NCBI GenBank assembly: GCA_965285935.1
Contig: OZ260661.1
Location: 138,508,001-138,572,000 of the forward strand
DNA from: Ophelia neglecta
Lineage: Eukaryota
Length of the DNA: 64,000 bases
Direction of reading: 5' to 3'
The first letter of the stretch is position 1. Each line of letters begins with the position of its first letter. The notes beneath the pieces are model-generated. The model worked only from the letters and a program-made list of their open reading frames with translations, made no database searches and was not told where the DNA came from. A program made the position numbers and the translations under genes. Below, piece after piece: positions 36,029 to 58,900 of this stretch.

Positions 36029-38467
36029 GCTGTCTCATTGGACCCAGTGGCGGAAGTTTCCCGAGTCAATAAAAGGCAATCAAGAAAAGAGACAAATGAA
36101 GGATCAAATGTGAATAGTGGTATGTACTTAGATATGAACTTAACTTTTAATATTGTATCAATCTCCTCTTCACCTTGTGTTATTGCACTCCCCCTTTACC
36201 GAGAAAAACACAAAAATAAGTACATTTATATGGCTTCCTCCTTTATCTTCACCGCTTTGAAACGAAATCACATCATCAGAATATCTGAATTATGTCGGCA
36301 TTTTATATATTTGCAGTAAAGGCTGTATTAATTAGAGCAGAGAAAAATAACACAGGGGCATAATACTTTCTATTAGTTTGGAAAAAAAATTGTCAGTGAC
36401 GCTGAAACTACCTACTGTAAATTTTATTATTCATTCATCACTGGCCTTGACATTCATTTCAATTTTGTATCGCTCCATCAATTGTTCATAAAATCATTGG
36501 ATAGGTAGACATGTGCATAGCTGTCTAAGGTGGAGTTATATTGTTTACAAATTTTGGGTTGATTATTTAAGAAAAAATCTAACAAGTGTCAGTTCAACGT
36601 GCAGCAGCTCTGCTTTATGTTTATTAAATTCGTATATGTGTCAAATTGGAATTAAATGCTGTCACTGACCTAAGTGTAGCCAGGGTGGAGCCATATAAAA
36701 CACGATGTTCCAAATCCAACCATTTATATAACTGCATAAATGATAACACATATTATTAAAAATTGTGCAACGCTGAAGCATATGGTTCATGACAAGGCAA
36801 TAACCACCTAACCATCTAGCTTTGCCAAATGAATGCATAGTTATCTGTTATGGGCAAGAACAAAACTTGCCTCTATTTGACCCCACCCCATATATATGTT
36901 CCAATATAGTGGTTCTGAGGGAAGCCCTTTTGTATTCCCTATCTCATTTCCTTCACATTTATTCGATTGTAGTACGAGCTAGAATACGACAAATAGAAGA
37001 AAATTCTGGTAGTGCTGCTGGAAGTACGTCAGCAAGCGGATCTAGTAATCCTGGCCCTGCCAGAAGAAAAGTAGGAAGACTTCCTACTTGCATATTTAGG
37101 GCGCATATGCCTCAGACAACGGAAGACAACAAAAATGTACCTATTGCTTCTGCAACGCAGGTAAAGCACTCTGATAAGATTTAAATGCCAATTTAACATT
37201 TAATGCACACATTTCCATCAACACAAAAAAATGCAAGATTCCTATAATTAAAATTTACGGCAGCCGATTCAAACTTGTGTGATGCTTGGTGATCCCGTGG
37301 TTTGCAAATAGTTTGTATTTTTTAACGGGGAAAGGGGGTATGAGAGGGTGTCTAACCATTTGGTCATATGTTATTTATCGTAAAGATATATCTCATAAAA
37401 ATTTATTTTAACGCATATCGAAGAGAATATGTATAAACAGATGATTTTGTTTTCAATTTATATATAAGCACTTTGATAAGATTTAAAGGTTCATATTACT
37501 ATAAAAACATACATTAATGCAAACAACTGCGTCCCAACATTCCTAGATTAAAAATATACGCAAGGCGATTCAAACTTGTGTGATAACTGATGACCCAGTG
37601 GTTTACACATACTTTGCATTTTTAAGGGGGGCAGGGTGTATAAAAGGGTGTCCAATCATTTGGTCATTTGATATGTATCAAAATGATATATCTCTTAAAA
37701 CTGATTTTAACATACATCGAAGAGAATATGTATAAACAGTTTGTTTTTTCTGTTTTCAATTAATTCTTAATACATTGCATAACACGTCATATTTTAATTG
37801 AAGGTCAAAGAACCAGTCACAAAAACTACAGCATTCACTACTCAGAATATAGAATCCAGTGGAAGTGGTGATTTAAAGATCTCGTACACAGAAGACAAAG
37901 CCGTAATTACCTCACAGAAAGCAGATGGTATGTCTAACAATCGACTAATAGTACAACGAACGATTAAACCTCTCTAGCATTGTACACCAAAGGATCTCAC
38001 CAAGCAATGTGTTATCAACAGCCTGAACGTAACTTGTTCACTTGTCCGAAAAGTGTATTCAATCTGGTCCTTAAACCAGTGGATGGTTCACATGCCCGGA
38101 TAGCATTTGTTTTTATTTCTTTCATGGTCCACAATTACAAATTAACTGGTTTAGCTATCTATAATATGCAGATGCGGACGGAAGGGAAAATGACGAGGTC
38201 ATTGCTGTATTAAACACCCCTCCAGACACTGTGGACCCTGATGTCACAAAGGATGACCCAAAAGAAGTTTCTATGGGTATTAATGTGGAGCGTATAAAGA
38301 AAACGATTTTCTCTTTTGGCTTCAAATACTACAATGCTTTTATATATCATATTGTTAACGCATTATTACATATTCTAAAGCTGCAGTAAACAGTCAACCA
38401 GAATACTCTTTGGAGTCCTTTGATAGTGTGGGGTTCAGACCGGTCGAAATACTTGACAGTGTGAAAG
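36029..38467 (+). CDS. Copy B N-terminal low-complexity exons (5 exons)
   Basis: GT-AG exons with compatible phases, open into the RRM array (AVSLDPVAEVSRVNKR...; VRARIRQIEENSGSAAGSTSASGSS...; VKEPVTKTT...SGSGDLKISYTEDKAVIT...). No recognisable homology, so support is splice and phase consistency only. Confidence 0.6.
37164..37762. repeat. Old intronic tandem duplication, 2 x ~300 bp
   Basis: aagcact(c/t)tgataagatttaaa...cgattcaaacttgtgtgat...atcgaagagaatatgtataaacag occurs twice, at 37164 and 37466. Confidence 0.85.
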
Positions 38468-39548
38468 GTAGGTATACATGTGTAATATATAGATGGGTAG
38501 GTAAAGTGTTCTTTGATGCTCAACTGATGTTCGAATGATTTCTAGTCTCGCTTCATTTTTTGTAACTTATGGAAGATATTACATAAATACCGAGAAATGT
38601 TTTCAAGATGATACATTAATTATCAAAATGGAATGAATGCTATGGCTGCTTGTATTCTTGTTGGAAGGTGCAATTAATTATTTTTTATTTACAAAAAAAG
38701 TGCATTAATTAGAACATAACTATTGTGGCTTGGCCAATCCCGAGCAAGCATTTACCATGTTATATTTTGTTAAAAGGCATGATGAAAGATACTATAAAGC
38801 ATTGTACCATCAATAAGCCGTTGCTACTGAGGACTGTATGCCCTCGGATATTCCAGCAGTACCTACATAATAATATATATCTGCTGAGTGCCAATTAACA
38901 GTCTTTAAAATAGTAGTTTGAAAGGTTAAAGATTAAATTTTCCATAAAGACAGTAAAAGGGTGCGAATGGACTTTAAAAATGACTCAAAACAGTCCCAAA
39001 TTTTTAAAATCTCTTCTTGCCTATAATCAAGCTAGTATTTGGTCTTGCAAATATTACTATGACCATATATGGATATCACTGCCTGCATGGAGATTCCAAT
39101 CTGAAGGATGTTCCAGCCAAGTCAATCTGTACCCTTGGTTGAAAGCCGCCCTTGCATGTTAGCGAGTAGGCCCAGCCATTACAAGAGGATTCAACTTTTT
39201 CCAATGATGGCAGGTGGCCAGTCCACAAAGGGGGACAGCCATGCTGACATAATTTAGATCAATTATAATATGCAGCAGATTTTACTAATGTTTCCCAGCT
39301 TTATGAAATGTTTAAAGTGCTCAGGTTTCCCGTTGCACTTTATACAATTTCTTCATGGGTCTATCAAGTCATAGAACCTCAATTATTTGTTGTTTACTGA
39401 ATATACCATTGTTCGGTTTTATACATCATAATACTATTTCACTTACTATTCATCAGTAGGGACCCTCGAGGTGGAATTATATAGCATGATATATTTTGCA
39501 TGCATACTAGTGTATGAACATACTATTTTAAACCATTCTTAATTGCAG

Positions 39549-42500
39549 ACACAAAACGTCCCACTAAAGCTGACTTTTCAACACATGTGTTTCTCAACCA
39601 AACCCAACTCAACGCTATTACTACTGAATCTAGTCTCAGAGAAAGACTTGGGAAACCCAAAATTGGTGGAGAGATTGACTACAATCGACCTGACAGTGAC
39701 ATACACACTGCAAGAGTTAAATTTAAAGACCCATCAGGTGAGGTCACTACACTTGATGAGTGTCATTTCAAGGGAAATTTATGTGGAAATTATTACCCGA
39801 TATTCCTCCATTTGTCTTTTTTTAGATTCAAGTCTGATGCATTCTAATATTACACAACTTAGCTAATTTGCACCCCACCCCCACCTACCACCACCCCACC
39901 GCTTTTGAAAAAAAATTGGGGAATATGTATTGGGCCTCCTGGCAGTCCATTTGCCATAACACCACTGCTGAATCCTTTTGTTTTGGCCGTTGCTGTTGTT
40001 GTTTGGGGTTTTACGTGGCTTTCAACACTTATCGAGCCTACTTGTGACAGTGGGCTCAATGCCCTCTTTAAAGTGCTGCCTCACTGGAGTACCTGCCGTA
40101 GACACCAGACAGGGAACCCCTCCCAGTCACATTATACTGACACCGTGTTAAAAAGTCCTGATACTACCCCCAAAATACCGGGCACCTGGCAGGGGAGCAA
40201 TCAGTACCTAATTTTACGTCTTAGGTTTGATGCAATCGAGGTTCGAACCCCGATCTCCCACTTGCGAGGCGGACGCCCTAACCACTCGGGCACGCTTTGG
40301 TGGTCTTTTGGCTGTAACTAAGTAAGGCCTCGATTCACAGAAATCATTTGGTAGTTATTGGTGTGCTTGGGACTGGGAATATATATTTTTACAAATTTAC
40401 TACTACTTATACTCAAGTCACAAATTTTTTCATGACCTCTTTTTGATAACCACTCATTCAGCTCACCCAACCATTAACAATTACTTAAATTAGTATTTTG
40501 TACTTTCAGATGATGATGAACACAAATGTGACAAAATTGCTACTGATTTAAACACCGATGAAACTTGTTTAGATGCTAAGAACCCGAATGAAGAACCAGA
40601 GCTGCCAAATGAACCCCAAAGAGTGATTAAGGTGAAGGGAATCAATAAACGAACACTAAACGCTACGCTTACCTACTTTTTTGAGAGCAAGAAGAGATCT
40701 GGTGGTGGTGACGTTGAAGAAGTAGTGCGTTCTGAGGGCTCAACAGAAGCGAAAATTACATTTAAAGATCCCAAAGGTAATTAAGCATCCTGTTTATTGA
40801 AGCAAAGTAGTGTCATAGTAAATGGATACAGCAGTCCCTGCAATGTGCCGTCCTTGTAATGGGCACTCTCCTGCAATGGTTGGCCATTATTTTAATGGAC
40901 CGATTGTCTTTCCATTATAAATTCCTGAAATGGCCGCCACCTATCGGGTGAAGCCGAATTTTGTTTATGACAGGGATGTGATTGCAATTAGCCAATCATA
41001 ACTGAGGACACACAGCCAATTCACTGAGGCAATACACAGTATCAACAGAGCAGGTCATTAAATGTGTTTGTTTGTTGTGTGCTAATTGCACAGACATCAT
41101 GGATGTGTCTGGTTGATCGACACGATTTTTTTACAGGCAGTCTTTTTGTAACAGCTGGATTTGGCTGTGCTGGAGCTTGTATGGGGATCAGTCTTTGATC
41201 TTTGTTGGACAAAATGGTGTCTTTGACAGCTTCATTTTGTTTATATATGGCAAATGTGTTTGTCCGTGGTAGAAATTGATGACTGGGGTGTTAAAAAAGA
41301 CATAAAAAATTCATCATTTCTGCCTTTCATTTAACAGCTAAATCCTAGATCAACATTGGATGCATATAGGGAAGCATATTTGTCACATCTTAACAAATCT
41401 TCAATTTAACCTTTGGGTCATTGGCATTATAGATGATTTAGTTTAGAATTAATGATTAAATTTTCAAGCTTGGGTACATAAATTTTGCCGGGTGTCCTGT
41501 CCATCCGGTGAAGGGCCAAGTGCAATTTAGGCCACTTTTGCTCTGATGGAGGGTCGGCCTCACATCGCAGGGACTGCTGTATTACCAAACAGGAGAAAAA
41601 ATCCTTATCTTTGTATGTATCAACCAAACAGCAATTTAAAGTCATGTCTCCACCCTCTTGGTATCACAGAAGAAGGCAGAAACTTAGTGAATATTTAGCC
41701 CATATGTCATCCCTTAATCAATGTACTTTTCAATACTCTCGTTATTTGAACTATTTGTAAGGTGTACGTTTTGTTTACAGATGCTGCCAATGTGCTCCAA
41801 CATGGACCTTTGACTCTGGAAAAGTCCAAGCTAGAAGTAACATTTGATACCAATGAGAATGTTTTAGATGCTGACTCGCAGAAGAATACTGTTCTAGTGA
41901 AAGGTTCGAAAATAATTTGAAGATAATTATAGTTAAATAAAGTGGAACATTGTTTTTTTAATTCTCTTTTTAATTATGTCCACCAAACGTTGTAGGAGAC
42001 ATTTGTTTACATGCCATTTGGTAGCTCGCCATTTGGTGTCTAGTGTCCGGCATCAAAATTTATTTGTCGCATGATAAAGGAAAACACCTGCTTTTTTTAA
42101 TTATTTTTTTTGGCTGCAAGAATATGCCATAATTCTGTCTGGCATTGTCCGAACATAAAAAATTGCAGTCTAACTTCTTAATATGAATAAAGACCTTAAA
42201 TTAATATCAAGTGCAAATATAAATGTTTGGGCTGCGAATTTGTTGGTGTTTCAGATGTGACCTTCATCTACAACTTCAAGGTACATAAATTAAAATCAAG
42301 ATTCTACCTTTAATAATAGCGGATAGAAACAAAATCATATAAGATTTATCTAGCAGTTAATTACGCTGGGGGTGTAACATGGTTATTGGGAAAAATTGCT
42401 ATTAGGGATATTTGGAATGATATAATTTTACCTGGGGGTAACAACCATTTCATTATCCCCCCCCCCCACCCCAATTAAAAATTGATGAGCCCTTAGTGCC

Positions 42501-45500
42501 CGTTGAGATCAGCAAATGAAACATTGCAAAAAATGTCACACTGATCCATCTGCTGCCCATGTCATTGTTGACACTACAATTGGAAATAAAAAATTTAATT
42601 TTATTCTTCATATTTACCCCATTTAGGCCTGTTTATTTACTGTTTTTATCTCATGTGTTTCCCAGGGTTGAAGCAGAGCATCTCGTTTGATACCATTGAA
42701 TGTTTTTTCGAAAACAAGCGACGTTCCGGAGGAGGTGAAATTAAGAAGGTAGACTACAATACTTCCACAGGAGAGGCTAAGATAACTTTTGTCAACCCTG
42801 AAGGTAACAACCTAGCAACAAAACATTTTATCAGCAGTAATCTGATGTTATAGTGGCTGTTGAGCCCACAAAAGCCGGACAATTTTTATATAAGTTTGAT
42901 ATATTAAGTGATGGCCAAATAATATTATAATATGAAAATGAAAAAGCAAGTCCAAATTTTGAAGTTATCTTAAAAGAAAACATGTGTATATAAAAAAAAT
43001 TCAAGAGCAGGCTGGAAACATAGAGGCAAGCAAAACATTGGGACAAAAGTAGAGCTGAAGGCAGACCGACATATGGTCGCTCCCAGGAGAAACCTTTTAT
43101 TTATCTATGATTAATGTTCCCTATTTTAGCATACAAATTATTTCACTATCCCTTAACTTAGCATTGGGTCATCACTGGTTTTTGTGAGGCTTTTAATTTC
43201 GCCAAGTTTCCGCCAAGTTGTGTCAGTCAAGATTTGCGTGGGACGCCATGTCTCTTGAACCGTTCATGGGAGTCTTTAATAGATGCTTGTGCTGACCTAA
43301 ACAGATTTTGGGTCAGATCGGAAAAACAAAATGGTCACCATTTTACAATAGTGAAAAATGTCATCTTTTCAGTGGCTAATGTTGCGAGATAGTCATATTA
43401 AATTTATTGAACTCTAATAGGAAATCATATACAAGGAATCCAGTGGTGACCTCGAATTTGACCTTGGATCTTTTTGCATGCTGAAATTGAGACATAACAT
43501 ATTTTAGGATGTGTTCCTAAACACCTTGTTTCTTTAATTATTAATTTTATTATATTACAGACGGATGTATTGATTTATTGTGGATAGATACATTTTTCTT
43601 TGTTGGCCAGGTTTCCCCTTTATTTGAGATCTTCTTATGTTATAAACAATTTTTTATATTATTTTTTATAGTTGACAGTACTTCACTAATAGGATGATTA
43701 CTTATAATCCAATTTTATTTCAAATTAATATTAAGTATAACCTGGGTCTATATATATTTCTAATTTATGGCCAATATGATTTTCGTAGAACTATTTTAAG
43801 AAATACTTTACTTCTGAATAATAGGTGTACAATTCAAATATATTTAACATGGCTGGGTTTTGAAGCCGCAACCAGCAAGGAGCTCATGGATAAATTTGAC
43901 TCTGCCATTGTATCATATTCCCATCTCTCCAAAGACTTAAATTTATTGAACGTTTTCAGCTGCTGCGAGGGTGGTTGAGAGAGAAAATCTAAAATTGGAA
44001 AACACCCCCCTCACAGTATCCTGGTGGATTGACAATAAAGGAGAGGTGTCTAAATTAGATTCTGAAGATTCATCCGAAGAAGATTTTGCAATAATAGTAA
44101 CAGGATTGACCACCAAAATATCAGATGACACTTTGCAATGTTTCTTCGAAAACAAAAAGCGAACTGGTGGAGATGCAACTCTTGTATATGAAAGACTTAG
44201 TGAAAACCATGCAAGAATTGCTTATGAAAATAATGAAAGTATGTTTTTTTTTCACTTTAACCTATTAAGCCCTCTTAATGTTCCACATTGCGTTTGGGCT
44301 ATATTATGTTTGGTTTTGAGTCTGTCAGTCAAGCATGGCAGCCATCAGGTTTTATATAATATACTCTGAATTGGCGGTCGGCACAAGAAACTTAAACTTG
44401 TGAGCTCGTTTTGGTTTTGTCTTGTGTGTCTGTTTGTACAGCCTAGTGGCCAGAGTTTACAACCTGGTTTCGATGAAGCTTCTCACAATAATTGACCACA
44501 ACATGGCAACAATGTATTAAATTGCTGTTTTAAGCCAACTTAAAGTAAAGATTACATCAATAAAATGCTTCAGAGAATAGCTGCGCATGCATATGTTTAA
44601 ATTAGCATATTTAAAGCTAGGGACTAAGGATTTAGAACAAATTTAATTCTTAATGTTAATCTTTATTTCTGCTGAGTATACACATCTGTGTTTTGAATTA
44701 CACAAATGATTCTAAGTCACTTTTATATGTTGTGATCTGTCATTTACAGCTGCCAAGAGAGTTCTTGAAAATGGGAATTTCACACTCGATGGAGTAAAAC
44801 TGACTGCTCAAAAAATGACTGATTTTGAACCAGTAAAAAAGGAGATCCCTCCCAGAGATACAATCCTAGTGAAAGGAATCGGTAGCCAAATTTCAGAAGA
44901 AGTAGTCTCACTGTTCCTTGAGAACAAAAAACGTTCACATGGTGGTCCTGTCTCACGAATGAAGTATGATCCAGTCAATGAGACTGCATTAGTCACATTT
45001 GACAATGCTGAAGGTTAACTCCAATTTTATTTTGTAGCATAGTTTCTTTATAATAATCTTGAAAGTCACTGTTATTAAATTTGCTTAATTGTCAGATTTG
45101 AGGTGGCTGTTGGAACATTGGCTTTAGGTGGTAATGTCTCTTTTGATTTTAATATTATTATATTTATATTGACCTGATGACTCAATGGTAAAATGGAAGG
45201 TTCCAACACAATTCTACATCAAAGTTAAGGCTCCTAGCTTCCTTTAATCGACTATGAAGCTTTGAACTTCTTAATGTGATCATATTTTTGTTAATATAAA
45301 TAATATACTAATTTTTATTTTGTATTTGTACTTTAGATGCCAACAATGTTGTACAGAAAGGAACCTTACTTCTCGATGGACAGACATTAATTGCTACATG
45401 GCCTGATATGGCTGATAAAGAAAACACCAGTGACACAGCAGGAAGTGAATTGCCATTGTCCAGGTCGCTGATGATACGGGGCTTGAATCCTAAAACTCAC

Positions 45501-48443
45501 CAAAATGTAATTAACATGTACTTCGAGAACCATAAGAGATCAGGCGGGGGCCCAATTGACGGAATACAACACGATGCTAAGAGGGGCACAGCCTTCATCA
45601 CTTTTAAAACTGCTGATGGTAAGCCAACTTGGAAGTACTTGAAAGCTTAATTTACTTTACAGGCATATCAGATTGATAGACATTTCCCTACGTTAATCAA
45701 GTTTTTATGACAATTTGATTAGACCATTGTAAGGAAGATTAAATGTTTTTCAGTGGTATACAAATATTTATGTAGCTAAAACTGCTATGTATTCTTTCAA
45801 AGTAAATACTTTATGTTGACAATAGTGTTGAGTGTAACGACCTGTGACTCTTTACAGCAGCCAAATCAGTGTTGCAGAAAAACAACCTTAAACTGGAAGA
45901 TTATCAACTTGATGTAGAAAGAGCGGACATAAAGGCTAAAATGCCTAAGCCAGCAGTCTCCATAGATGAACCTAAACCAGTCGCAGCTATAGAAGTCAGT
46001 GGGTTTGCTGAAAGTGCCACTGAAATATCCGAAGAGATGCTGCGACTATTCTTTGAAAATAAACGCAGCTCCGGAGGTGGAGACATCAAATTTATAAATC
46101 TGGACAAAGATAATGGGGTCGCAGCTATAACATTCATGAATGCTGAAGGTATCAAAAATTGGTTTTTATTACTACCATACATTTGTAACGAAAAGAGTTA
46201 AAGACAACATCCAATCTAGCACTCAATTTTCACTAAAATGTAAATTCACCCCAATTCAAATGAGATTCCCATACTCACTAAGAAGTAAACTATTTCGTTT
46301 TGTCACAAAAGAATATAAAACTTGCGTTTGCTCACCTCTTGAACTAATCGAAACAGCAGATCGCCGATCGTGTGACTTTTTTTTTAGCAACACCGTCTGT
46401 TACAAAACCCCACTGTCTGAAACAAATGCCAGTTATAGTCGGGTGTTTTTTGCTTTTGTGAATTCCAATGTTTTGAACAAATGTGACATTTGGGGGGTCG
46501 GGTTCTGGTTCATTTGTTGGCAAAATTTGGCCATTTCTTTCTCTGCTTTTCTCACATTTTTTGCATTTTCAAGTGTTTGGAGCAAAGAAAATATTTCAGG
46601 GTTCAGGTTTTTGCTTTTCAAGTATCTCTTTGATGCATAAAAATTGATTGGGATATTGAAATAGATGTCTGTAATTGGGTAATTCCTTCTTTAACTATGG
46701 TACATTGTATAAAAAGAGCCTCGTTTCAAGCTAGTTGTTTTAAATTTGTTTACAGATAATCAGCAGCAAACTATTTTTTTTAAATACTCTGCAACAAACA
46801 ATGTTTACAATTTGTTCAATATATTTTAGTCGCCCCCCCCCCCCTCCCCCTTCCATGAAGTTTTGTGATTTACGGCAGGTTGTCACAGAATATGGAAACG
46901 CATGTAAAGTGAATTATTATTGGTTGTACCGCTGCTGCATCCAAATATATATTGCGTTGCCATTTCCGAATAAGCACTGACAGGACGATTTATCCGCTCT
47001 TGCCCATGCCTATCACCGGCCCATCATATTGTTGTCTTTTCTTCTGATGTCACACACTCAAACAAGCGGAGTGGCTTGTTCAGCTCTGTAAGTCCGAGAA
47101 CTGTTCCGAGAGCATTAGTTGCCGTGTTTTTTCTTTTTTTTTTGAGCACATTGTGCAGAGAGCAAAATATTCCAGTTCTGACAGCACTTTTATAAAATAC
47201 TGAAATATCTTTTTCTCTAATAATTGTGTCAATGAAAAATTTACTGGTTATTATCTTTAACATAGCAAGTATCCCACAACACTAAATTTGAACATCACTC
47301 TGATAAAATCCGACTTTAATTCTTTTCTGTTAAGATGCAAACGAGGTTTTGAAGAAAGGAACATCCAACCCATTCCAACTGTTTGGGGTGCCATTGAATG
47401 TAAGAGGTCTCGAGATAGAAGTTCCAGCAGTGAGTTGTGCAATAGAAGTCAAGGGTTTTCCAGCGGACACAAATGAAGACCATATTGTAATGTTCTTTGA
47501 GAATCGTCGGAGGTCAGGGGGTGAACCCATTGAAGCAATTCATTATGATGTGCCAAATAGGCGTGCAATCATAACCTACCCAAATATTGAAGGTGCGTGT
47601 GATCTTTTAGGAGCCATCTTATTATTGGTCAATTAAATAGCATATTTAACTTGCTATACAATCAGAATGAACAAAAATCATGTTGCATTTTGCTAATTTT
47701 CTGTTTTGTAAAATATTATCATAATTGACCTTTCCTCTTGTTTCTCTCCATTCATTCTAACGGACATCCCTGGCATTAAACTGAATGGCTAATGTAACAA
47801 TTTGTATTTAAGCCCCTCAGAGAGTGATACAAAAGCAACCCCTCGTGCTTGATGGTGGAACTTTAAACATCAAGATATTACAACCTGCAAGACCAGTAGC
47901 GCCAATACATGGACCAGTTGACAAGGACAAAATCCTAGTCAGTTCTCTAGATGAGGATACCCCATCTGAAGACCTGGTATTGTTTCTGCAGTGCACCGCG
48001 GATTGTATGGTCAAACAGGTTCAGTTTGGACTGACAGAGGGAGTAGCCTTGGTGGAATTTGATGGTATCCCCGGTAATTTTTAAATCTACTTATTCTGAT
48101 ACTGCACAGCAATAAATATAAATATGTTTAGAGATGGTTAGCTTCAAAACTGATACATCAAGTAAACAGATAAATATATAGTTGATTTAGTTAAGATCAT
48201 ACAGTCAGATTTTTATCTTAACGTCAGGATCAAACAGATTTTTATTATTTCATGCCTTTACCAGATTATGATGCTGTTAGAAAACTAGTCAGTTTGAAGC
48301 CTCTGAGTGGCCGTATGTTGTGTGTTCAGCAAGTGCCACTCCCAGATAGCATCCAGGTCCACAATATATGTGGTGTCAAAGAGTACTTGCTGTCCCTCTA
48401 CTGTAGAAAGTCGACATTCCGTTACCGTACAGCAGGTTGGTGA
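39549..48443 (+). CDS. Copy B tandem RRM/NID-like repeat exons
   Basis: Recurrent motif: FFESKKRSGGGDV, FFENKRRSGGGEI, FFENKKRTGGD, FLENKKRSHGGPV, YFENHKRSGGGPI, FFENKRSSGGGDI, FFENRRRSGGEPI, plus a variant repeat (47813-48073). Each is followed by an A-x-I/V-T-F-like strand. All introns here are phase 1 and the frame is open up to the deletion junction. Confidence 0.88.
39989..40295 (-). mobile_element. tRNA-derived SINE with a Meta/MESC-like core
   Basis: Minus strand: A-box region CCGAGTGGTTAGGGCG, B box GGTTCGAACC, core ...CGGTGTCAGTATAATGTGACTGGGAGGGG..., and an (AAC)n tail. Confidence 0.75.
40829..41579. mobile_element. Tc1/mariner-like MITE (751 bp) in an RRM-array intron
   Basis: TIRs CAGCAGTCCCTGCAATGTG / CACATCGCAGGGACTGCTG (18/19 match), with TA on both sides. 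Confidence 0.85.
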
Positions 48444-48873
48444 TGAAAAAAAGGAGAAACACTATCACCCAGGAAAAAGAAGTCCTGCAACCACAGGTAA
48501 GTTGATATAGATAGTGCTCAAGTTATTTGTTTCAATTGATTTTATTTTGGAAGTCAGTACACAACTGGACTGCTTTCGACCAATAGCAATAAAGCAAAAC
48601 ACTTTTTATTATTCTTAGGTAGTGAGGTTGAGTTGGTAGACGGAACGCCAGCCCCAAAGAAGGCAGCCCTTCGGAGAAGTGTGGCCACTGCAGGTATATG
48701 TATATTTTGATAAGTTTACTTATTAGAGAGAAACTGCTATTTAAGAATCTGAACAAACATAAAATAATATTTATTTGTTCACTTAATATCATAAATTCAG
48801 ATGTCATGTTAGTTTTAATCATTTTCAACATTATTTTTAGTCTATATTTCGGTACATCAATATGCTATCTATT

Positions 48874-49922: not shown

Positions 49923-52900
49923 CATCCTTTAATTGGTGTCAAGCAACAATCGTAATCAAGTTATATCTAGCTCTCAATGTATCATTTAATATAACTGAAG
50001 ATACACTGAACTAACGCCAATAGGTTTTAGTAAAATTTATTTTTTTACATATAGCCGCAAATTCAACCAAAGCCTTGTTCACAAAAGTAAATGACAAGAC
50101 GCTGATGACTTCTCAGGGTGTCCTCGTCACCCTCGCTATAGGAGGCATAGAGCTGCAGAAGGTAACATGCTGTGCAAATATAAAACACATTATCTTAGCA
50201 ATCTGATGATATAGAACTTCCATTAAAACTACCAGGTAAACATTGAAGTCAGCTTAGCTTTTCAACCCCTTGCCTAATACAATTTACAGTGTTTTCAGCA
50301 AAAGGAATTATGTGGGGGGTTGGGGGGGGGGGGGCATCTAGAGAATGATATATGTACATTTGTTTGATTTTCTTTACATTTCTTACCATTTCCTCTTTTT
50401 TTTGTACGAATCCATGTTTTTGGTAAGGCGGGGGGGGGGGGGGGGGGGAGGGAAGGGGGGGGGCTAATAACCAAAGCGAACAACACAATTTTTAAACATG
50501 TGGGCACAAAATATTTGGTGGGGAGGTGTTGGGCAGGTTTTATGGGTCTCAATGTTGTGTTTTAAATAAAACAGCATTTAATGGGGTGGGTGGGGGCGCC
50601 AACTCTTGCTTTTACTCTGCCAGAAGTAGTTTAAGGACAGACTTTTTAATTTTTTTTTCAAAAATCCTTGTTGTATATGCACCCCAATTTCGCACTCTAT
50701 ATGCATTCTAAACTTGCCTGGACACAATTCATATGTTGTAGTGATTAATATGGTTAGAACTGGACATTTTTAAGGGGGTGGGGGGGGGGGAGGTTAATTT
50801 TATAAAATTCACTACTACCCCTTCTCTTTTTACGGAGATGTATCAACCTTTCTCGGTAGCGTGATACAAAAATAGTATTTAAAAGTACTTAACATAAATA
50901 TAAAGGGACACAGCAGCTGTACTTATTAACTATCAGGGTAAATTGCATTTCTCAACAACTAATGTGCATTTCTGAAGATTATTTTTACTTACATCAATGA
51001 AGACTTTATCGGGAATGCATCTGTCTCAATATGTGGTGACTGCACTTTTAAATGCATTGTTTAAATGAGATTTTTAGGGGACACATTGCGTTCTGCAAGT
51101 GTACCGACTGATTTAAATATGTATTCATTTTCAAGCTGCCCACACACACTTTATCTTAATAGAGCCTCTACTTTTCCATATATTCCGAGTTATTAAATTC
51201 GACATCAAGGTGTAAACAGGTTTGGAAAATATATTTTCTCCATATGGAAAACAAGCTTAGATAAAATTGTAAAAAAGATGGCTTCGGTGGGTCCTATTTT
51301 TTTGCAAAATGATTTTATAAAAGGGGTTTAGAACTATTTAGTGCACTCGCACATATAACGGTTGATTAAGTAACCTAAAGTCATAATATGAGTTATATTA
51401 AAGACAAGCATGCTTCAATACAAGTTAGTTGTTCAGTAATTGAATGAGTTTTTTGCTCAGGAAAGACGTTTATTTATTTCCCCGCCTTTTTTTGAAAAAA
51501 ATTCCGGGGTTGTATTTTAGTTTATAGGACACATAAGCCCAGTGTGCATCCCCCTTCCCCCCCCCCCTCCCAGGATCTTACCATGTATGCATATGTTTTG
51601 TCCTATAGTAAAAACTTGATTTTGTTTCCGTCTTGATGTTTTAAATTGATTTTCCCAGGTGGATGTGATTGTAAATACTACATCTAGAAATATTGATGGA
51701 AAAAGTGGCGTATCTAGAGCAATATTCAATGCAGCAGGACCTGGTCTTCAGGTATGTTGATCAAACATTCACTGAATTGTCGATGTAAACCATATTGACT
51801 GACTTTTTGCACAACTTGAGTAAAGCTATCTTAGGTTATTATGTTGTCATATTCCGGATGTGATGCATCATCATGCAATCTTTCTTTTCATCTTTTCCTA
51901 ATTGATACGACGACACCACCTATCAACACTGTAGATGACTTTTGTCTTACGCATACCAGCAAAATGCATCTGGATTTCTTTTAATAATATGCAAGGCCAC
52001 TCTTACCCATTTTTCCTTTATTTATTGCACGATAGACAACAAATATCTATTTGCTTAAATGTTAATAACCATGTAACTATTCATATCTCTTTAAGAACAT
52101 TATATGTTTTAAATTGCGGTTTCTCATGCCGGAATATGATTTTGATTTGCAATGCTTTAGAAGAAGGTGCAATTTTGATTGACATGTCTCATCCAGTCAA
52201 TTTAGTGGCTAAGTTTATAACATTCAACTTGCCCTTGACAGCTCGTTAATATGCAATGTTCTCTATATCCATTTTTATGATCAAAATATTGGGGCAGATA
52301 TTATAATGTACAGAGACCGTGATCATCACTGTATCCTTAAATATGAAGGAATGTGTCATTTGTTAGGTTACTCGTGCATTGGGATCTTTTCCATGTGAAA
52401 CCCTTGTTAAAGTTGCAATTGTGTACAGTTTTCTGAAGATCATAAGCCAAGGAAAGATACAATACGCTCTTTTATTTTCTATTTTGTATTTAAAATACTG
52501 CAAAGGAAGAACTTTTTGGACAGCATCATGAGATAAAATACTGCAACCAAAGACACGCAAAAGTAATACAAAGGAATCAAATTCATAGCCGAGCAAAGTC
52601 TTGCACTCCATTGAATTGTGGTGAAAGATTGCGACTTGCCATGAAAGATATGATAAGAGCTGTAGGTGTGAGAGGCACTATTTGAAGAAATTAGATGTTC
52701 TTCAAATACAAGCAAAGCATCTATTTGAGTTCAGCGTCTCCGTGGCACATGGGTCTTATTAATAACTAAACCAAAAGTTAGCTTTTTTAAACCTAACGCT
52801 TTATGGACCAAGTAATACTTCTATTTTTGGGGCTGCTCTAAAGGCATTTCCATAATATTTGGGTCATGTTAATACGGTATTACCGAGTTGGCCAGTACCA

Positions 52901-54924
52901 AACCCGCCGACCTGCGAATCTACTTTCCAGATTAATCTCTACCAGGTTAAGGCAGCAAATACAGGCAAGTTGCGTATTGAAAAATGTGCCCGGGCGGCTG
53001 TACTGCATTGCTGCGATTCGTAGTTCCCACTTGCTCCTCCGGTGGCGCTAGGAGTATCATGGAATCAGCGTATTGAATGTACCACCACGAGGATAAAAAT
53101 GAGATGCTATTCAGGAACTCTTCAGCAGCACTAGGCCCCTTTTTGATTTTAAAATCAGAAGGTTGGCTTGCAGCTCACAAATGACGCTCCCAAAACCAAA
53201 TGTGTTTTTAAAAGTCTTGTAGTGATAAGTAACCAAATATTTCTTTGAGGGCTGCACTATCGGACTTTCATGACATAAGGGGCATGTTAATTGCTTTGCC
53301 CCATCAAGTAGATAATAAAAACAGGAAAATGGGGTGAAAATATTATAAGATACATTTTTTAGATGCAAAATTCGCCTTAAAAATGAAATAAAGTTAAACT
53401 TTGGTTTGTGCCATGGCAGCTCAAAAATGACACAAGCTCTGAAGAAAAAATGAAAAGCCTTACAGCAAGTTTTTAACCATATAAAAAAGGCCGTTATTAC
53501 TAGCAATACAATTCCTTTGCATGTCATGTTATAAATTTGTTTATATGGCATAAGAAAATCACACTCTATGATTTGCCGTAGAACGTTTGTAAGTGTTGTT
53601 CGATTATCACAGTTGGAAACTCGACAGTGTGTGCCATTGAATCCCGGATCAATTGCAGTAACAAGTGGACAAAATCTGCAGTGCAAACATATCTACCACG
53701 TAAGCTGCAGTAAATGGGATGGTCCCAATGGCAAATGTGAAAGGGTAAGCTAAACTGGCCTTATGGTTAACAATCTGGATATTGTAAGTTGGGCACTCTT
53801 TCAAAAAGGATGATTATGGTCAACCAATTTACACAACTAATTCAACCTTTGCATATAGACAACATAGACCTGCCAAACATCACTGGCATGTACGAAAAAA
53901 AATATTGTTTTACACACATTGTGCTTTGATCTAATATGGATGTAAAACTGAAAGAACAACAGCCTAGTTGTATCTTCAATCTTATTTGGTGATATATTCA
54001 TACTTACCATAGTATGCCACATAATATTTACCTCCAACCCTCATTGAAATGAGGTCATTATAGAAGCTCGTAGGAAAATAATACTTTAAGGCAAATGTCT
54101 TAGATATATGCTATGTTAAGGGGGATTAGATGATGTTTGATCTAGTAAGTATGTCAGATAGGTTATATGGTTGTTTATGCCTTCATTGATTGTTTTTCAG
54201 TTCATCAAGCAAATTGTCCCTGATAGTTTGAAGACAGCAGAGCAAGCAGGCCTCACTTCAATAGCATTCCCTGCCATTGGAACTGGTATGTTCATTTATA
54301 TTTACAATTTTAATTGTCCTGTGAGAAAATAGAACCTGTACACTTGCTGTTGATTAACAACAGATAAATATATACTTCAAGCATCTGGCCATATGTTATT
54401 TTAAAGCAGCAGATAAAATTGTATGATTCCAGTTTGTTGAACGCTCTGTATGAAAGCCTATATGAAACAAAGTGATTTTGATTGTGCATATTATAAGGTT
54501 ACCATAATCTGCCTTGGGTCCAGGTAAAAGCTCTAAGTCATTAGTGAACTAGAATTTCATTGGAAGCCTAAACAACATTTTCATTTGAGTGTGCATTGGC
54601 ATAATCAAATAACTATTTTTATAATATTGTCAAGCTCTAATTCAACATCTGGGTCACAGAAACACAGTGGGAGACTGTACAAGCATACATTATCATCATC
54701 TAGCAAGGTGTTAGCACCAAGATAACATGCTCCTCACTCTAGGATAACGCATGTGATATGGGAACCCGCTTCAAACGACTTCATCATAGATCGTGTTCAT
54801 GTTCATTGTGGGCCCGTTGTTAGTAGTGATGAAAACGATCCCATTGCTAAATGTAGGTTGAGTCTTGATTAATCATAATCAGCAGTAGAAGATGATGATA
54901 AAAGTAATGACATGATTCGTTTAA

Positions 54925-55903
54925 GGACACTGCAGCATATTAAAATGTGCTTGATCATGGATGGAGGTGAACATGCTTAAGCTAAACCAGGACTAAAATG
55001 AAATTATGTTTTTTTTTCTGTTCGAGGCAGAATAAGGTCATTCCTGAAGGCTTGACCTTTACTCTAGGAGGCTGTGAGATAAAACCTGCAAACTCCGTCA
55101 CAAACTTAGGTTGCTTGTGGGATCGAGCACTCACCATGGAGAACGAAGAGCAGGCAAAAAAGAATCATGTTTCTGCCAGCTCAGGCACATTAGCCGTCTC
55201 CGACATATCAAAGGACGTGTGTAAAACGCTGGTGCAAGCCCTGGTAGTATCAAGACTGGACTACGGAAATATTTTATTAATAGGGCTATCCAAATGTCTT
55301 CTCCAGAAACTTCAGCGTGCCATGAACTTTGCAGCACGTCTGATTACTTTCACACCTCGAGGGCAGCATATCACACCTGTATTCAAACAGTTTTACTGGC
55401 TGCCGGTCAACCGCCACATAGAATACAAGGCTCTCTTTATGACTTACAAAGCACTCAATGGTCTGGCTCCTAAGAATATTCTTTATCTACTTGATGTGTA
55501 CCAGCCGCCTCGCACTTTACGATCAAGTAGTAAATTGATACATACGGTTCCTCAAATGAGAACAGGCGGCACTGTTTCAGATATATTGCTCCATGTCTTT
55601 AGAACAAGCTGCCGGAGGATATAAAAACTGCCAAAATAATTATGTCTTTAAGAAGCAATTAAAAACACAACTGTTCAAATTAGAATACATCTAGTGCCTT
55701 ATTCTTAAAATTGTATTTCTTTTTGTTTTATATTGTTGTAACTTTTAACAAGGACCTATTTTAGCGAAATCTAGTTACTACTTTAATCTGAGTTGCTTGT
55801 AATAAAACTATTAGTTGCTTTCTATTTTGTAAAGCGCTTAGAGCTATGTATAGGCGCTATAGAAATCAATGTATAATAATAATAATTATTATTATTATAA
55901 TAT
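54925..55903 (+). mobile_element. 5'-truncated L2/CR1-group LINE (3' end of ORF2 and tail) in a copy B intron
   Basis: WMEVNMLKLNQD, then LVQALVVSRLDYGNILLIGL...KLQRAMNFAARL...HITPV...WLPV...YKALNGLAP...RTLRS. The 3' end reads gtaaagcgcttagag...ggcgctatagaaat followed by a (TAA/TTA)n tail. Confidence 0.88.
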
Positions 55904-58900
55904 TAGTGGCCCTCCATCAACGAGCAACAGCCCTTCATAGTCAATAACACCCTCGGCTCTTCCTCGGGCGCTATTAGCAATATGGAGCTTCAATGACGTC
56001 ATCAATTCAATTATGTCACTTTGCTAAAATAGCTGAGCAGCTACAGTGCCGAAACACATTGAAAGTCTAAAGGAAACTGCATTCTGTGCTGTTAATCGAG
56101 TTTTCCAGTTTTTTAATATTTCAACTGAGAATTTCTTTAACAGTTCTATTAACCTGTTAATAGTTTAATAGGCGGTGTGGAAGTGGACAAGTAAGAAGCC
56201 TAATAGGCTTAACATAATATTAACCTCTGGTGGAAACCGGATTATGTTTTGTTGCCAAAATTATGATGAAAATTAGTGATTAGCAATTTTTTCTGCAAAA
56301 AATGAAAGGGGGGAGGCAGGGGGAGGCGTGGCCGGATGGTCCATGTCTTCAAGTGGGATGGCCGAAAACTGGTGAACAAAATTTTCATGAAAAATTAGTT
56401 ATTGGCCCAGTAACTCTGTCGACGCTCACTCGTCTTCATGCCTTATGTAACGTCTATACTGGATCAGTCAGGCATTCAAAATGGATTGGAAGGTATAGAA
56501 AGCAAAACCTTGTGATTATGATTGCTTTATAAGATTTGACTTTGAACTCATTTTCAATAATAAAATCATTATTTAAGCCTTTGTTTAAGAAGTAAGCGCA
56601 TAGTAATTCATGGGAACCTATGTGGAGCGATATTATTTTGCATCTTATCAAGTTCCCCGGTGTGACTTGTCTTTATTTCCAAGTTTAAATAATCAATATG
56701 GTGGCGAGAAGTACATTGCGAACCTAAAGGAAATTATATTGTGCATAATATGCTCTCTGATATGACCCGGAACATCTTTTTCAAGGTCAAATTGATAAAA
56801 GCGTGATTTCAAACTTTATATGGGCTGTAAGTTTTATGAAGAGATGACGGAATATGCCAAGTAGTTGATTGTGTGTCTATTGATATCAATTAAGGCGAAT
56901 TATCATGACACTGTAGATTAGTTGACAGAATATATCAAATCACATATTCTGTTACTATATATTGATCAAACCCGCATCATTATCATTTAACAGCTAGAGC
57001 TTAGATCAACACTGGATGCATGAAGGAAAGCATGTTTTGTCTACCTTACTGAGTTTTTAGTTTTTAGTAATACATTCTCAACTTCAGATAACTTTATTCA
57101 TGATTCCTGCCTTTAACAGCTAGCAACTAGATCAACGTTAGAAGCCTATTGGAAATCATATTTGATACATCTTATCCAATAATCAATTTTGACCTTGGTG
57201 TCCATTTTCAAGGTTAGATCACTATATTCTGCCTTTATTTTAACTGCCAACCCCTAGGTCCACAACGGAAGCCTTAATGGAAGTATATCTTTGGAATCTT
57301 ATAGAGTTGTCAATTTTGACCTAGGTGTCCATTTCAAGATCAGATAACAAAAACTAAATAAAAAAATGTATTCCTTTGTTTTATCACCTAGAATCTAGAA
57401 CTATTCTTACAATCAAAGAACCACATTTCATGCATTTTATCAAGTTTTTAGATGGGAGAGTTAATTAAACCACTTACTCCTGTCAGTCTTGACATCGGTT
57501 TGCATACCATTCCACACATACCATGCTTGCCTGACTCATTTTCATGTTAACATAAATATTGCAACATACAGATGATGGGAAGTAGAAAAATAAAAATACC
57601 TAAATTGTTTTGCTATAATGTTTAGCAGGGAGCAGGGCAGTAAAGTCCATCACATGACTGGTTCCGGAATATTTCACAATGAAACACAGTCTCAATTTAT
57701 CATTTTGCCAAGAGTGACATTTGTAGGGGCATCAGGTCTTCTATGTATAGTTTATCTTAAAATTTCACAGTTTTAGGGAATAGCATCAGAGCATTAGTAC
57801 TACCCAAGGTGCATTAGACAGGATGTGCTGAACTTGAGGTTTCAAATGGTACTCAAAAAAGGTTTAATTTTAATTAATTTTCTTGGTAGGAAACAACAAT
57901 GTTCCAAGAGATAAATGTGCTGAATTGCTGTATCATGAAGTGGCCATTAATCCACATACATCAGTCAAAGATGTCCGTTTTGTGATCTACGACCAGGACA
58001 CTGAAACAGTCAAGGTAAGCTGTTAAAAAAACAAACTCATGCATATACTATTTACAGAGGTCTACTGTCTTACGAATGATGATAATCCGTTGTTCAAACT
58101 ATCGTTAAGTCCTCAAACCTTTCGGCAGCCCCATATTTTGCGAACTCTGTGATTGGCGTCAAATATGTTAAAGGTTCACCAGAATTAGATGCCCCCTGAA
58201 TACTTATTGTTGATACCTGTTAAATGCAATCTTTAAATTAAAGGGTAGCGGGAAAAAATGTGTGTGCCAATATCACCGACAGTAACAGCCTCAAAATTAA
58301 ATGGTTTCACAGTGATCCACAAATTAACAATTAAAGTAATGTAGATTCATATGCATTATATTAGGAATACATTCTGATAAAGTCCCTGCTGAATCGACAT
58401 GCAGCTTATTATCATACGCAAATACTGAATTTACACTAAAATATAAAACAAGACGTTTGCAGGCACTGTCACCTTTTTTCCAACTGATAACTTATATTGG
58501 TGCATGTTCCAGAAATAATCCTTGCTATATATTTATTTATTGTATTTATAATGCATAATAGGTGAGCTTTATTTTCGCTCATGCATATAAAGAAAAATCG
58601 GATTTATCTTCCATCTCCACCCCCTGCCCCCCCCCCCCCCCCCTGTCCCGGAATTGTACTATTTATCAACTTGACAAATCATAGGTCTTTGGGGGTCTTC
58701 TTGCTACATCACTACAGACCCACTAAGACCTTACTTATAAAGCCAATCGGAGCAGGTATCAACTAGAAACAAATTGGGTGCAATTTTAAATCTCTGGTAC
58801 CCTAGTCAAGTAATAAGGCTAATTATGCCCACCTACAAATAATTGAGGAAATGTTCTTTGCACATGTCTGAGACTCTGCCCGTCATTAGACCAAATATTG

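What the first reader, a model, noticed from the sequence alone, without database searches (positions are those of the whole stretch)
48265..48496. 3533-bp exon-to-exon deletion turns copy B into a predicted RRM-only (NMI/IFP35-like) protein
Seen: B reads ...ccctcta-CT-gtagaaag..., joining A 129 to A 3663 through a 2-bp CT microhomology. This removes three whole KH-block exons and parts of two others. The fused 232-nt exon shifts frame (SLY-CRKSTFRYRTAGW*). The upstream frame from 36029 is open for 1023 codons with no other lesion. Known: NMI and IFP35 are immune proteins built largely from the related NID/RRM repeats, with no catalytic domain. Inference: B is either a very young NMD-sensitive pseudogene or a catalytically empty decoy/adaptor next to an intact enzyme, resembling a sensor-effector pair.
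Basis: partly seen in the sequence, partly recalled or inferred. Interest (0 to 1): 0.75.

Follow-up and report, generated by a model that had tools for sequence, protein, structure and literature searches.

The report
Young frame-breaking deletion in PARP14-like copy
One of three side-by-side copies of a PARP14-like (antiviral-type ADP-ribosyltransferase) gene has lost 3.5 kb holding its KH domains, which breaks the reading frame; it is most likely a very young dying gene copy, an ordinary event in a fast-changing immune-type gene cluster.

Summary
Copy B lacks copy A's bases 130-3662 (3,533 bp). The ends join at a 2-bp CT. This fuses two exons into a 232-nt exon (48265-48496) whose frame shifts: 13 foreign codons, then TGA TGA.

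The deletion is derived and unique to B. A third tandem copy (Z) and four more copies keep the block, and the junction occurs once in the genome. The lost block is real coding sequence: KH1 plus a confidently modelled four-unit KH array, with dN/dS 0.34 between A and Z.

Every other B exon I could identify is open, including WWE and the PARP catalytic exons.

Best reading (0.6): a nascent unprocessed pseudogene or NMD target in a gene-converting PARP14-like cluster.

The decoy/NMI-IFP35 reading has no direct support, because the predicted product ends inside a broken RRM. It is not excluded, since an RRM-only partial copy lies 2.1 Mb away.

Skipping the fused exon would stay in frame; this scan noted that before on the same stretch (s1-748440).

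The only public runs are short contigs from one sample. They show the undeleted form but neither show nor exclude the junction. No RNA run exists, and substitution tests cannot separate B from A.

Interest is low to moderate.

The parts
48265..48496 (+). Fused exon of copy B (232 nt): front of exon X joined to the back of exon Y; frame shifted after ...SLY
48401..48402 (+). CT microhomology at the deletion junction (= A 128-129 and A 3661-3662)
48441..48446 (+). Two consecutive in-frame TGA stops after 13 foreign codons (CRKSTFRYRTAGW)
48405..48406 (+). AG just behind the junction, now preceded by pyrimidine-rich exon-X sequence. If used as an acceptor, the exon 48407-48496 (90 nt) would be in the original frame (hypothetical).
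47813..48073 (+). Exon W of B (261 nt, phase 1-1), the exon before the fused exon
48619..48693 (+). Exon after the fused exon (75 nt, phase 1-1). Joining W to it would stay in frame.
130..3662 (+). Stretch of copy A that is absent from B (3,533 bp)
1..225 (+). Copy A exon X (starts 8 nt before the window): front two thirds of the last RRM. Pfam RRM_PARP14_3, profile positions 2-52 of 82, E 2e-9.
488..951 (+). Copy A exon 2: end of the last RRM plus KH1. Pfam KH_PARP14_1, E 6e-4, 20.6 bits against a cutoff of 21. Deleted in B.
2142..2282 (+). Copy A exon 3 (141 nt, phase 0-0), deleted in B
2463..3291 (+). Copy A exon 4 (829 nt): four KH-like units. AF2 pLDDT 95.7; best PDB matches are tandem KH proteins. 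Deleted in B.
3613..3756 (+). Copy A exon Y (144 nt, phase 1-1). Its first 50 nt are deleted in B.
40494..48073 (+). RRM-array exons of B. Eight open segments match PARP14-type RRM repeats, and all are open as in A.
51653..64000 (+). B exons behind the deletion (macro region to KH8), all open. B's WWE and PARP exons lie beyond the window at L011:1559-1768, 3797-3994 and 4407-4685.
18928..19137 (+). Copy A WWE exon
21480..22367 (+). Copy A PARP catalytic exons (21480-21677 and 22089-22367)

Best explanation
What is shown. B is the third unit of a tandem array (Z, A, B; units of about 48-55 kb) of PARP14-like genes. It carries a copy-specific 3,533-bp genomic deletion.

How it arose (inferred). 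The ends were joined at a 2-bp CT, by end joining or replication slippage.

What it removes (shown). The deletion fuses the exon holding the front of the last RRM to the exon behind the KH block. It removes 1,580 coding bases: the rest of that RRM, KH1 and a four-unit KH array. The frame shifts, giving 13 foreign codons and then TGA TGA.

What follows (inferred). The acceptor of exon X and the donor of exon Y are unchanged, so the fused exon should normally be spliced in. The main transcript would then carry an early stop upstream of at least 15 further exons. It should be degraded by nonsense-mediated decay, or at best yield an RRM-array protein that ends inside a broken RRM.

Conclusion. B is therefore most likely a nascent unprocessed pseudogene in a birth-and-death, gene-converting cluster. 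Its other exons are still open because too little time has passed.
For: - Deletion and frameshift.
- Derived state. Z aligns to A across the whole block in one 14.1-kb match at 94.3%. Six copies hold the full 1.7-kb block and five more diverged copies hold the large KH exon.
- Uniqueness. Only 1 of 23 genome matches to the 501 bases around the junction spans it, and that one is B itself. A, Z and four minus-strand copies break exactly there.
- The lost block is functional sequence. A versus Z shows 33 synonymous and 43 replacement changes, dN/dS 0.34, p 1e-5 against neutrality, with no stops or gaps. AF2 gives pLDDT 95.7 with four KH-type units, and the top PDB matches are tandem KH proteins.
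- The last RRM is destroyed. A's exon X hits RRM_PARP14_3 at E 2e-9, while B's fused-exon peptide hits nothing.
- Youth. The fused exon is 100% identical to A on both sides. In B, 9 of 9 upstream and 15 of 15 downstream open segments with PARP14 similarity are still open. WWE and PARP exons score as in A.
- Context. PARP14 genes are known to duplicate in clusters and to give partial derivatives (PMC13224862, passages read).
Against: - No read evidence for the junction. The only runs are short contigs of one sample. They show the undeleted form at 48401/48402 in all three runs, and no junction-bridging piece appears among the 24 of 580 pieces listed.
- No RNA run, so splicing, NMD and expression are untested.
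- Substitution tests do not mark B as freer than A. Downstream singletons are B 7 synonymous / 22 replacement against A 5/27 (Fisher p 0.52). B's RRM exons have 3 synonymous and 1 replacement change, too few to judge. Replacements at conserved positions are B 3 of 13 and A 6 of 24.
- All flanking exons are phase 1-1, so in-frame transcripts are possible.
- An RRM-only partial copy with open exons exists elsewhere in the genome.
Confidence: 0.6

Rival explanations
1. B still makes an enzyme. Transcripts skip the fused exon (exon W joined to 48619), or use the AG at 48405-48406. Either route keeps the frame and would give an RRM-array - macro - KH8 - WWE - PARP protein without KH1-5.
For: - Exon W (261 nt), the fused exon's neighbour (75 nt) and A's exons X and Y (234 and 144 nt) are all phase 1-1.
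- An exon starting at 48407 would be 90 nt long and in the original frame.
- All 15 downstream segments, including WWE and PARP with the LWHGT and GVYFA motifs, are open in B.
- Unchecked notes of this scan report other trimmed PARP14-like genes in this genome.
Against: - The normal acceptor and donor of the fused exon are unchanged, so inclusion is the default.
- Each exon carries the last third of one RRM and the first two thirds of the next. Skipping therefore also leaves a broken RRM at the joint.
- B has a B-specific C-to-F change in the FNRSYCGKN stretch. The ancestral C (shared by A and Z) is found in 71% of the aligned relatives at that position.
- No RNA data.
Confidence: 0.15
2. The truncated RRM-array protein is made and used as a non-catalytic adaptor or decoy beside the full-length enzymes.
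For: - B's whole 20-kb upstream region is duplicated with A at 97.5%, so B probably keeps A's promoter.
- The RRM exons are intact, with 3 synonymous against 1 replacement B-specific changes.
- A partial copy (D, 2.1 Mb away) holds only RRM exons. Its frame closes 19 codons after the homology ends, its compared exons are open, and pN/pS against A is 0.39.
- Pfam NID scores on the RRM region of relatives.
- An AATAAA at 48588 in the next intron could in principle end a transcript early. It is also present in A.
Against: - The product would end inside the last RRM, about 20 of 82 profile positions, followed by 13 foreign residues. D, in contrast, keeps that RRM whole.
- The stop lies before many exon junctions, so decay is expected.
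- No NID hit in any of the 36 pieces scanned.
- Four B-specific changes cannot show selection.
- The 0.39 for D mixes both lineages.
- No expression data.
Confidence: 0.08
3. The deletion, or B as a separate locus, is not a fixed feature. It could be an assembly error, a structural variant on one haplotype only, or two alleles laid in tandem.
For: - The runs hold only 0.62-0.65 of the sampled words.
- No junction-bridging contig was listed.
- B-type letters were seen only in run X2 at 45668-45705, at depth 14.8 against 69 for the A/Z type.
- A and B are 97.5-100% alike around the junction.
Against: - An assembler cannot create a join on a 2-bp overlap; it must stand in reads (established knowledge of overlap assembly).
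- B is a mosaic distinct from both A and Z, with A-like 5' and Z-like 3' parts, and it shares two insertions with Z. It is therefore not a simple allele of A.
- The unit-to-unit junction sequence recurs between Z/A and A/B.
- The only N run (24150-24316) keeps the spacing seen in the other copies, so it looks like a masked stretch and not a scaffold break.
- The tool itself says contigs drop rare variants.
Confidence: 0.1

Closest known systems
Human PARP14 (three RRMs, KH1-6 in line, KH7 split by three macrodomains, KH8, WWE, ART)
   Same: A, Z and B have the same order of modules: PARP14-type RRM repeats, KH1 and a KH array, a macro region, KH8, WWE and the PARP catalytic domain. The architecture is taken from PMC10450202 and PMC13224862, passages read.
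   Different: - There are many more RRM-type exons here, at least nine.
- The nearest full-length relatives in the protein library are only about 26% identical over the KH exon.
- B lacks KH1-5 and the back of its last RRM.
PARP9 and PARP15, partial duplicates of PARP14; clustered PARP14-like paralogues in amphioxus and sponges
   Same: Tandem or clustered duplication followed by loss of N-terminal modules is the known way this family diversifies (PMC13224862, passages). This genome has at least 12 PARP14-like loci within about 3 Mb.
   Different: PARP9 and PARP15 are old, in-frame and expressed. B's loss is out of frame, very recent, and of unknown expression.
NMI / IFP35 (NID-domain proteins)
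   Same: Their NID domain is related to PARP14-type RRMs: Pfam NID scores on the RRM region of P0007 (E 3e-8) and P0017. That CDD groups them with the PARP10/14 RRMs is my recollection only.
   Different: - No NID hit on any piece of this gene.
- B's product would be far longer and would end in a broken domain.
- It arises from a frameshift, not from a dedicated gene.
Young unprocessed pseudogenes made by microhomology-joined deletions in tandem gene families
   Same: There is a copy-specific disabling deletion with a 2-bp junction overlap, an otherwise intact gene, and intact sister copies alongside.
   Different: Both breakpoints fall inside exons, so one hybrid exon with intact outer splice sites results. 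Symmetric exon phases leave in-frame escape routes.
ZAP-S / ZAP-L (PARP13 isoforms with and without the PARP-like domain)
   Same: It is an example that an N-terminal RNA-binding part of a clade-3 PARP can act without the C-terminal domain. This is recalled; only the title of Kerns et al. 2008 was seen, in a reference list.
   Different: ZAP-S is made by regulated 3' end choice and ends with whole domains. B's truncation is a frameshift in mid-domain.

Membership tests
PARP14-like macro-PARP (clade 3) | N-terminal PARP14-type RRM repeats | tested here: met
   RRM_PARP14_3 hits above the Pfam cutoff on B exons (E 1e-9 to 2e-7) and on A exon X (E 2e-9).
PARP14-like macro-PARP (clade 3) | Row of type I KH domains between the RRMs and the macrodomains | tested here: not met
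   Met in A and Z: KH_PARP14_1 at E 6e-4, just under the cutoff; AF2 gives four KH-type units; PDB matches are tandem KH proteins. Not met in B, where exactly this block is deleted.
PARP14-like macro-PARP (clade 3) | Macrodomains | tested here: inconclusive
   Short exons of A and B match the macro regions of P0007 and other relatives by local phmmer. The two single-exon pieces given to Pfam had no hit. The exon model of this region is incomplete.
PARP14-like macro-PARP (clade 3) | C-terminal KH8 - WWE - PARP catalytic domain with the H and Y motifs | tested here: met
   KH_PARP14_8 weak hit in A. WWE E 2e-8 in A and 2e-9 in B. PARP E 2e-11 in A and 6e-12 in B. LWHGT and GVYFA are present in both.
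NMI / IFP35 | NID domains (Pfam PF07292) | tested here: not met
   No NID hit in any of the 36 exon or ORF pieces scanned (at E up to 0.01; at E up to 0.1).
NMI / IFP35 | Small protein with an N-terminal coiled coil, induced by interferon | not testable with these tools
   The 5' end of the gene is not established, and no RNA run exists.
Unprocessed pseudogene | Disabling lesion absent from sister copies | tested here: met
   The frameshifting deletion is unique to B.
Unprocessed pseudogene | Loss of selective constraint | tested here: inconclusive
   B singletons: 3 synonymous / 1 replacement upstream and 7/22 downstream, not different from A (4/4 and 5/27; Fisher p 0.52). All three copies run near dN/dS 1 downstream. 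Counts come from 20 of 25 coding cores.
NMD substrate | Stop codon well upstream of the last exon-exon junction | tested here: met
   The stop is at 48441-48446, and at least 15 further exon segments follow. This rests on the exon model only.
NMD substrate | Transcript exists and rises when NMD is blocked | not testable with these tools
   No RNA run holds the stretch.

The most novel reading that the evidence does not exclude
B is not dead but is a fresh domain-loss variant caught at birth. There are two possible forms. One is a KH-less RRM-macro-WWE-PARP enzyme made by skipping the fused exon or by using the new in-phase AG behind the junction. The other is an RRM-array-only adaptor like the partial copy D found 2.1 Mb away. 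Either way it would show how PARP9-, PARP15- or DTX3L-like partial derivatives of PARP14 arise from a single microhomology deletion in a tandem array.
Probability: 0.15. Interest if true: 0.55.

Novelty: new member of a known kind. Interest (0 to 1): 0.25.

Why it matters
PARP14-type genes are fast-evolving antiviral-type enzymes, and their family grew by clustered duplication and partial loss. This locus shows one such loss at its very beginning: a single exon-to-exon deletion in an otherwise untouched copy, inside an array that is still exchanging sequence. If B is simply dying, it is a routine example of birth-and-death turnover and mainly a caution for gene annotation. An automatic model could easily skip the fused exon and call B intact. 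If B is expressed in frame, it would be a natural test of what the KH1-5 row of PARP14 does. That role is still unknown even for the human protein (PMC13224862, passage).

Tried and rejected
- Reads. The look-up of sequencing runs gave three runs of one sample and one study, all short contigs, none RNA. Read laying on 45600-51400 showed the undeleted continuation as loose ends at 48402 (three runs) and at 48401 (two runs). It showed no joints, and no junction-bridging piece among the 24 of 580 pieces listed. This neither confirms nor refutes the junction.
- Reads against copies. Of the 40 listed 'other letters', 31 equal Z's letter and 11 of those also equal A's. Nine fit neither copy. So the long contigs laid here are mostly from Z.
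- '1023 open codons from 36029'. I could not rebuild it. 36029 follows an AG and is not an ATG. I listed splice candidates but did not force a chain without RNA.
- Selection tests. Singleton counts came from 20 of 25 coding cores. I dropped -4317, -3552, -888 and 8828 because Z did not align end to end, and 21156 because B aligned over only 210 of 225 nt. The conserved-position test used 19 of 20 cores. Neither test separates B from A. I reject high dN/dS downstream as a sign of decay for two reasons. A and Z show it too, and positive selection in PARP14 macro and ART domains is in print (PMC13224862, passage).
- Pfam on the 276-aa KH exon gave only a weak KH_SLS1_1 hit (E 0.008). The KH label rests on the fold.
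- Simple unequal crossover as the origin of B is rejected as a full account. That model puts the A-5'/Z-3' hybrid in the middle of the array, but B is last, and A's 3' flank is Z-like. Several exchanges are needed.
- Scaffold gap at 24150-24316 as a sign of a false duplication is rejected, because the spacing of flanking homology is kept in B and Z. I did not look up the letters.
- Literature. One search (PARP14, tandem duplication, pseudogene, invertebrate; at least 3 of 4 terms) listed nothing on PARP14 among its 10 rows. Searches gave the PARP14 and NMI/IFP35 papers. I read only passages of PMC13224862 and PMC10450202. The other papers I saw as listings only.
- Not done. I consulted no supplementary files. 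I did not try to identify the organism.
Full report
**The locus.** The window is G000:C1:138508001-138572000. Self-comparison shows a tandem repeat. A 1-129 equals B 48274-48402 at 100%. A 3661-10240 equals B 48401-55013 at 98.2%, with further collinear blocks up to the window's end. After adding 20 kb upstream and 30 kb downstream, the repeat unit is about 48 kb. A -19999..129 matches B 28361..48402 in one alignment of 20,182 columns at 97.5%. Homology ends near A 27300 / B 72500.

A third unit, Z, lies upstream. It matches A from -3689 to 10240 in one 14.1-kb alignment at 94.3%.

The gene in each unit is PARP14-like, on this evidence:
- RRM_PARP14_3 hits on several exons.
- KH_PARP14_1 on A 490-951 and KH_PARP14_8 at A 17355-17651.
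- WWE and PARP catalytic exons in A and in B.
- The 276-aa exon of A (2463-3290) finds 251 proteins at E up to 1e-3 in the representative library, 95 of them at E up to 1e-10.
- The best full-length relative, P0007 (2,168 aa, 26% identical), carries five RRM_PARP14_3 stretches, KH1, three macrodomains, KH8, WWE and PARP.

**The observation.** I placed exon borders by eye on the sequence. tblastn to P0007 supports them: exon X matches residues 515-595, exon 2 matches 595-755, and exon 4 matches 803-1085.
- Exon X ends at 225 and is 234 nt, phase 1-1.
- Exon 2 is 488-951, phase 1-0.
- Exon 3 is 2142-2282, phase 0-0.
- Exon 4 is 2463-3291, phase 0-1.
- Exon Y is 3613-3756, 144 nt, phase 1-1.

The deletion takes 96+464+141+829+50 = 1,580 coding bases, two more than a multiple of three. 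The fused exon 48265-48496 (232 nt) reads ...EYLLSLY CRKSTFRYRTAGW and then two TGA codons, at 48441 and 48444.

**Direction and uniqueness.** Z keeps the block. A search of the whole genome with A 2100-3800 finds the full stretch in six copies at 83-100% identity. It finds the large KH exon in five more diverged copies at 67-75%. B matches only with its last 140 bases. A search with the 501 bases around the junction gives 23 matches. Only B spans the junction. A, Z and four minus-strand copies at 138.68, 138.75, 138.81 and 138.90 Mb break at it. So this is a deletion in B, not an insertion in A.

**The lost block is real coding sequence.** Between A and Z it has no stop and no gap. It shows 33 synonymous and 43 replacement differences, dN/dS 0.34, p 1e-5 against neutrality. 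AlphaFold2 on an alignment of 43 sequences models the 276-aa exon at pLDDT 95.7, with four beta-alpha-alpha-beta-beta-alpha-like units. The best PDB matches are tandem KH proteins: 3n89 at E 1e-4, then FMRP KH1-KH2, Krr1/Pno1-type chains, IMP1 KH34 and PCBP2 KH1-KH2. This fits the published human layout of KH1-6 in line behind the RRMs (PMC10450202, passages).

**The rest of B.**
- All 9 upstream open segments with PARP14-type similarity in A have an open partner in B.
- All 15 segments behind the deletion do too, including KH8, WWE and both PARP exons.
- Of 25 coding cores, B aligns end to end without gaps in 24. The 25th aligns over 210 of 225 nt and lies in an open segment.
- WWE and PARP score alike in A and B, and LWHGT and GVYFA are present in both.

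I assigned single differences among A, B and Z to the odd copy, using 20 of the 25 cores.
- RRM exons: A 4 synonymous / 4 replacement, B 3/1, Z 25/34.
- Behind the deletion: A 5/27, B 7/22, Z 5/12.
- B does not differ from A (Fisher p 0.52), and none of the three departs from neutrality downstream.
- Replacements at positions conserved in at least half of the aligned relatives: A 6 of 24, B 3 of 13, Z 1 of 35, against a background of 0.376.

So B cannot be told from A, and A itself is not visibly constrained. Fast, positively selected macro and ART domains are known for PARP14 (PMC13224862, passage). The high downstream ratio is therefore no sign of decay.

**Mosaic structure.**
- In the 10 kb before the junction, B is mostly 98-99.6% like A (two 1-kb windows are near 96.4%) and about 87-97% like Z.
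- From A 3.6 to 8 kb, all three are about 98-99% alike.
- From A 10 to 17 kb, B is about 97-99.6% like Z but 91.5-97% like A.
- A's 3' flank (24-28 kb) is about 97-99.6% like Z and only 77-93% like B.
- B and Z share a 1.8-kb and a 0.9-kb insertion relative to A.

It means repeated exchange among the units. A single unequal crossover does not explain the order Z, A, B.

**Reads.** Only three runs hold the stretch. They come from one sample and one study, are kept as short contigs, hold 0.62-0.65 of the sampled words, and include no RNA. Laid on 45600-51400, they show the undeleted continuation (TTGAGAACG...) as a loose end behind 48402 in all three runs, and TTATCGTGG before 48401 in two runs. 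There are no joints, and only 24 of 580 pieces are listed, none bridging the junction. Most listed differences equal Z's letters (31 of 40). B-type letters are visible only in X2 at 45668-45705, at depth 14.8 against 69. The junction thus stays unverified by reads. A join on a 2-bp overlap cannot be made by an assembler, so I hold it for real in at least one haplotype. That step is inference.

**Consequences.**
- The acceptor before 48265 and the donor after 48496 are those of A's exons X and Y, so inclusion is expected. The stop then lies upstream of at least 15 exon segments, which fits an NMD substrate. These steps are inferred.
- A's exon X matches RRM_PARP14_3 at profile positions 2-52 of 82. 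The junction falls after about position 20, and B's fused-exon peptide matches no family. A truncated protein would therefore end in a broken RRM.
- Escape routes exist on paper. Exon W (47813-48073) and the exon at 48619-48693 are phase 1-1, so skipping the fused exon keeps the frame.
- The AG at 48405-48406, now preceded by pyrimidine-rich exon-X sequence, would start a 90-nt in-frame exon.
- In both routes a broken RRM remains at the joint, because each exon carries the end of one RRM and the start of the next.

**The decoy reading.** No piece of this gene hits NID, however, and nothing shows expression.

One new fact bears on plausibility. A partial copy, D, lies on the minus strand at about 136.407-136.425 Mb.
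- It holds RRM exons that are 81-96% identical in protein to A's exons.
- It holds the first 38 residues of exon 2. Its frame then closes 19 codons later.
- No KH, macro, WWE or PARP exon was found in the 31.8 kb downstream.
- Its five gap-free exons are open, with pN/pS 0.39 against A (29 synonymous / 38 replacement, p 2e-4). One further exon has a 1-base gap that I did not resolve. The ratio mixes both lineages.
- Unchecked notes of this scan also report about 45 kinase-RRM genes and several trimmed PARP14-like genes in this genome.

RRM arrays without a PARP domain are thus not foreign to this genome. Unlike B, however, D keeps its last RRM whole.

**Comparison and novelty.** Clustered PARP14 duplicates and partial derivatives (PARP9, PARP15) are in print (PMC13224862, passages). 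A young paralogue disabled by a microhomology deletion is a known kind of event. The particular points here are that both breakpoints lie in exons and that the exon phases leave in-frame routes. My three literature searches showed nothing on this locus or on such a deletion.

**Limits.**
- The exon model of the macro region and of the 5' end is incomplete.
- I read no supplementary files.
- The N run at 24150-24316 was left untouched.

Noticed in passing
L021-L023 (G000:C1 about 136,406,800-136,424,900, minus strand): Partial copy D. It holds RRM-array exons 81-96% identical in protein to A's, plus the first 38 residues of exon 2. Its frame then closes 19 codons later. No KH, macro, WWE or PARP exon was found in the next 31.8 kb. 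Its exons are open and pN/pS against A is 0.39. One exon has an unresolved 1-base gap.
   Followed up: partly
L019-L021 (reverse strand; my local coordinates 26826-30499, 31722-35395 and 42355-45348 of the 50-kb stretch): Downstream of D lie two identical 723-aa single-exon ORFs in tandem and a third related one. Each is followed by ORFs ending in a motif that I recall as Deltex C-terminal-like (...ITWNDIHHKT). No tool was run on them.
   Followed up: no
window 1-64000 with L009-L018: The units Z, A and B are a mosaic. B is A-like in its 5' part and Z-like in its 3' part. A's 3' flank is Z-like. B and Z share 1.8-kb and 0.9-kb insertions relative to A. This means repeated non-allelic exchange.
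   Followed up: yes
window 54998-55621: A 208-aa ORF with no Pfam hit lies inside the 1.8-kb stretch (about 55013-56833) that B and Z have and A lacks.
   Followed up: partly
window 24150-24316: A run of 167 N in A's 3' region. The distance between the flanking homologous blocks is similar in B and Z, so it looks like a masked stretch and not a scaffold gap. The letters were not looked up.
   Followed up: partly
window 28593-29213: An ORF with a zf-RVT hit (E 3e-8). It is a retroelement remnant near the border between units A and B.
   Followed up: no
window 37164-37764 (and A -11120..-10518): Two adjacent units of about 300 bp, 75% alike, in the 5' part of the gene, present in both A and B.
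   Followed up: no
L012-L013 (window coordinates about 82000-94000): A fourth, older PARP14-like gene (C, about 70% identical to A's 5' region) follows B. It contains 2,285-bp tandem repeats at about 85302-91772 (97.6-98.2% alike), that is, a recently multiplied RRM cassette. Its large KH exon is at G000:C1:138604081-138604914.
   Followed up: no
A -2749 (L010) and the macro-to-PARP exons of A in window 6911-22367: Copy A, the supposedly intact neighbour, has its own replacements at conserved positions (6 of 24). One is F to Y in the YFEN motif of an RRM. Its downstream singletons are 5 synonymous against 27 replacement. A is not visibly under stronger constraint than B.
   Followed up: partly
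window 45600-51400, runs X1-X3: In the only public runs, contigs carrying Z-type letters have about twice the depth of A/B-type contigs. Nine of the 40 listed differences fit neither A nor Z. The sample may differ in copy number or haplotype from the assembly.
   Followed up: partly
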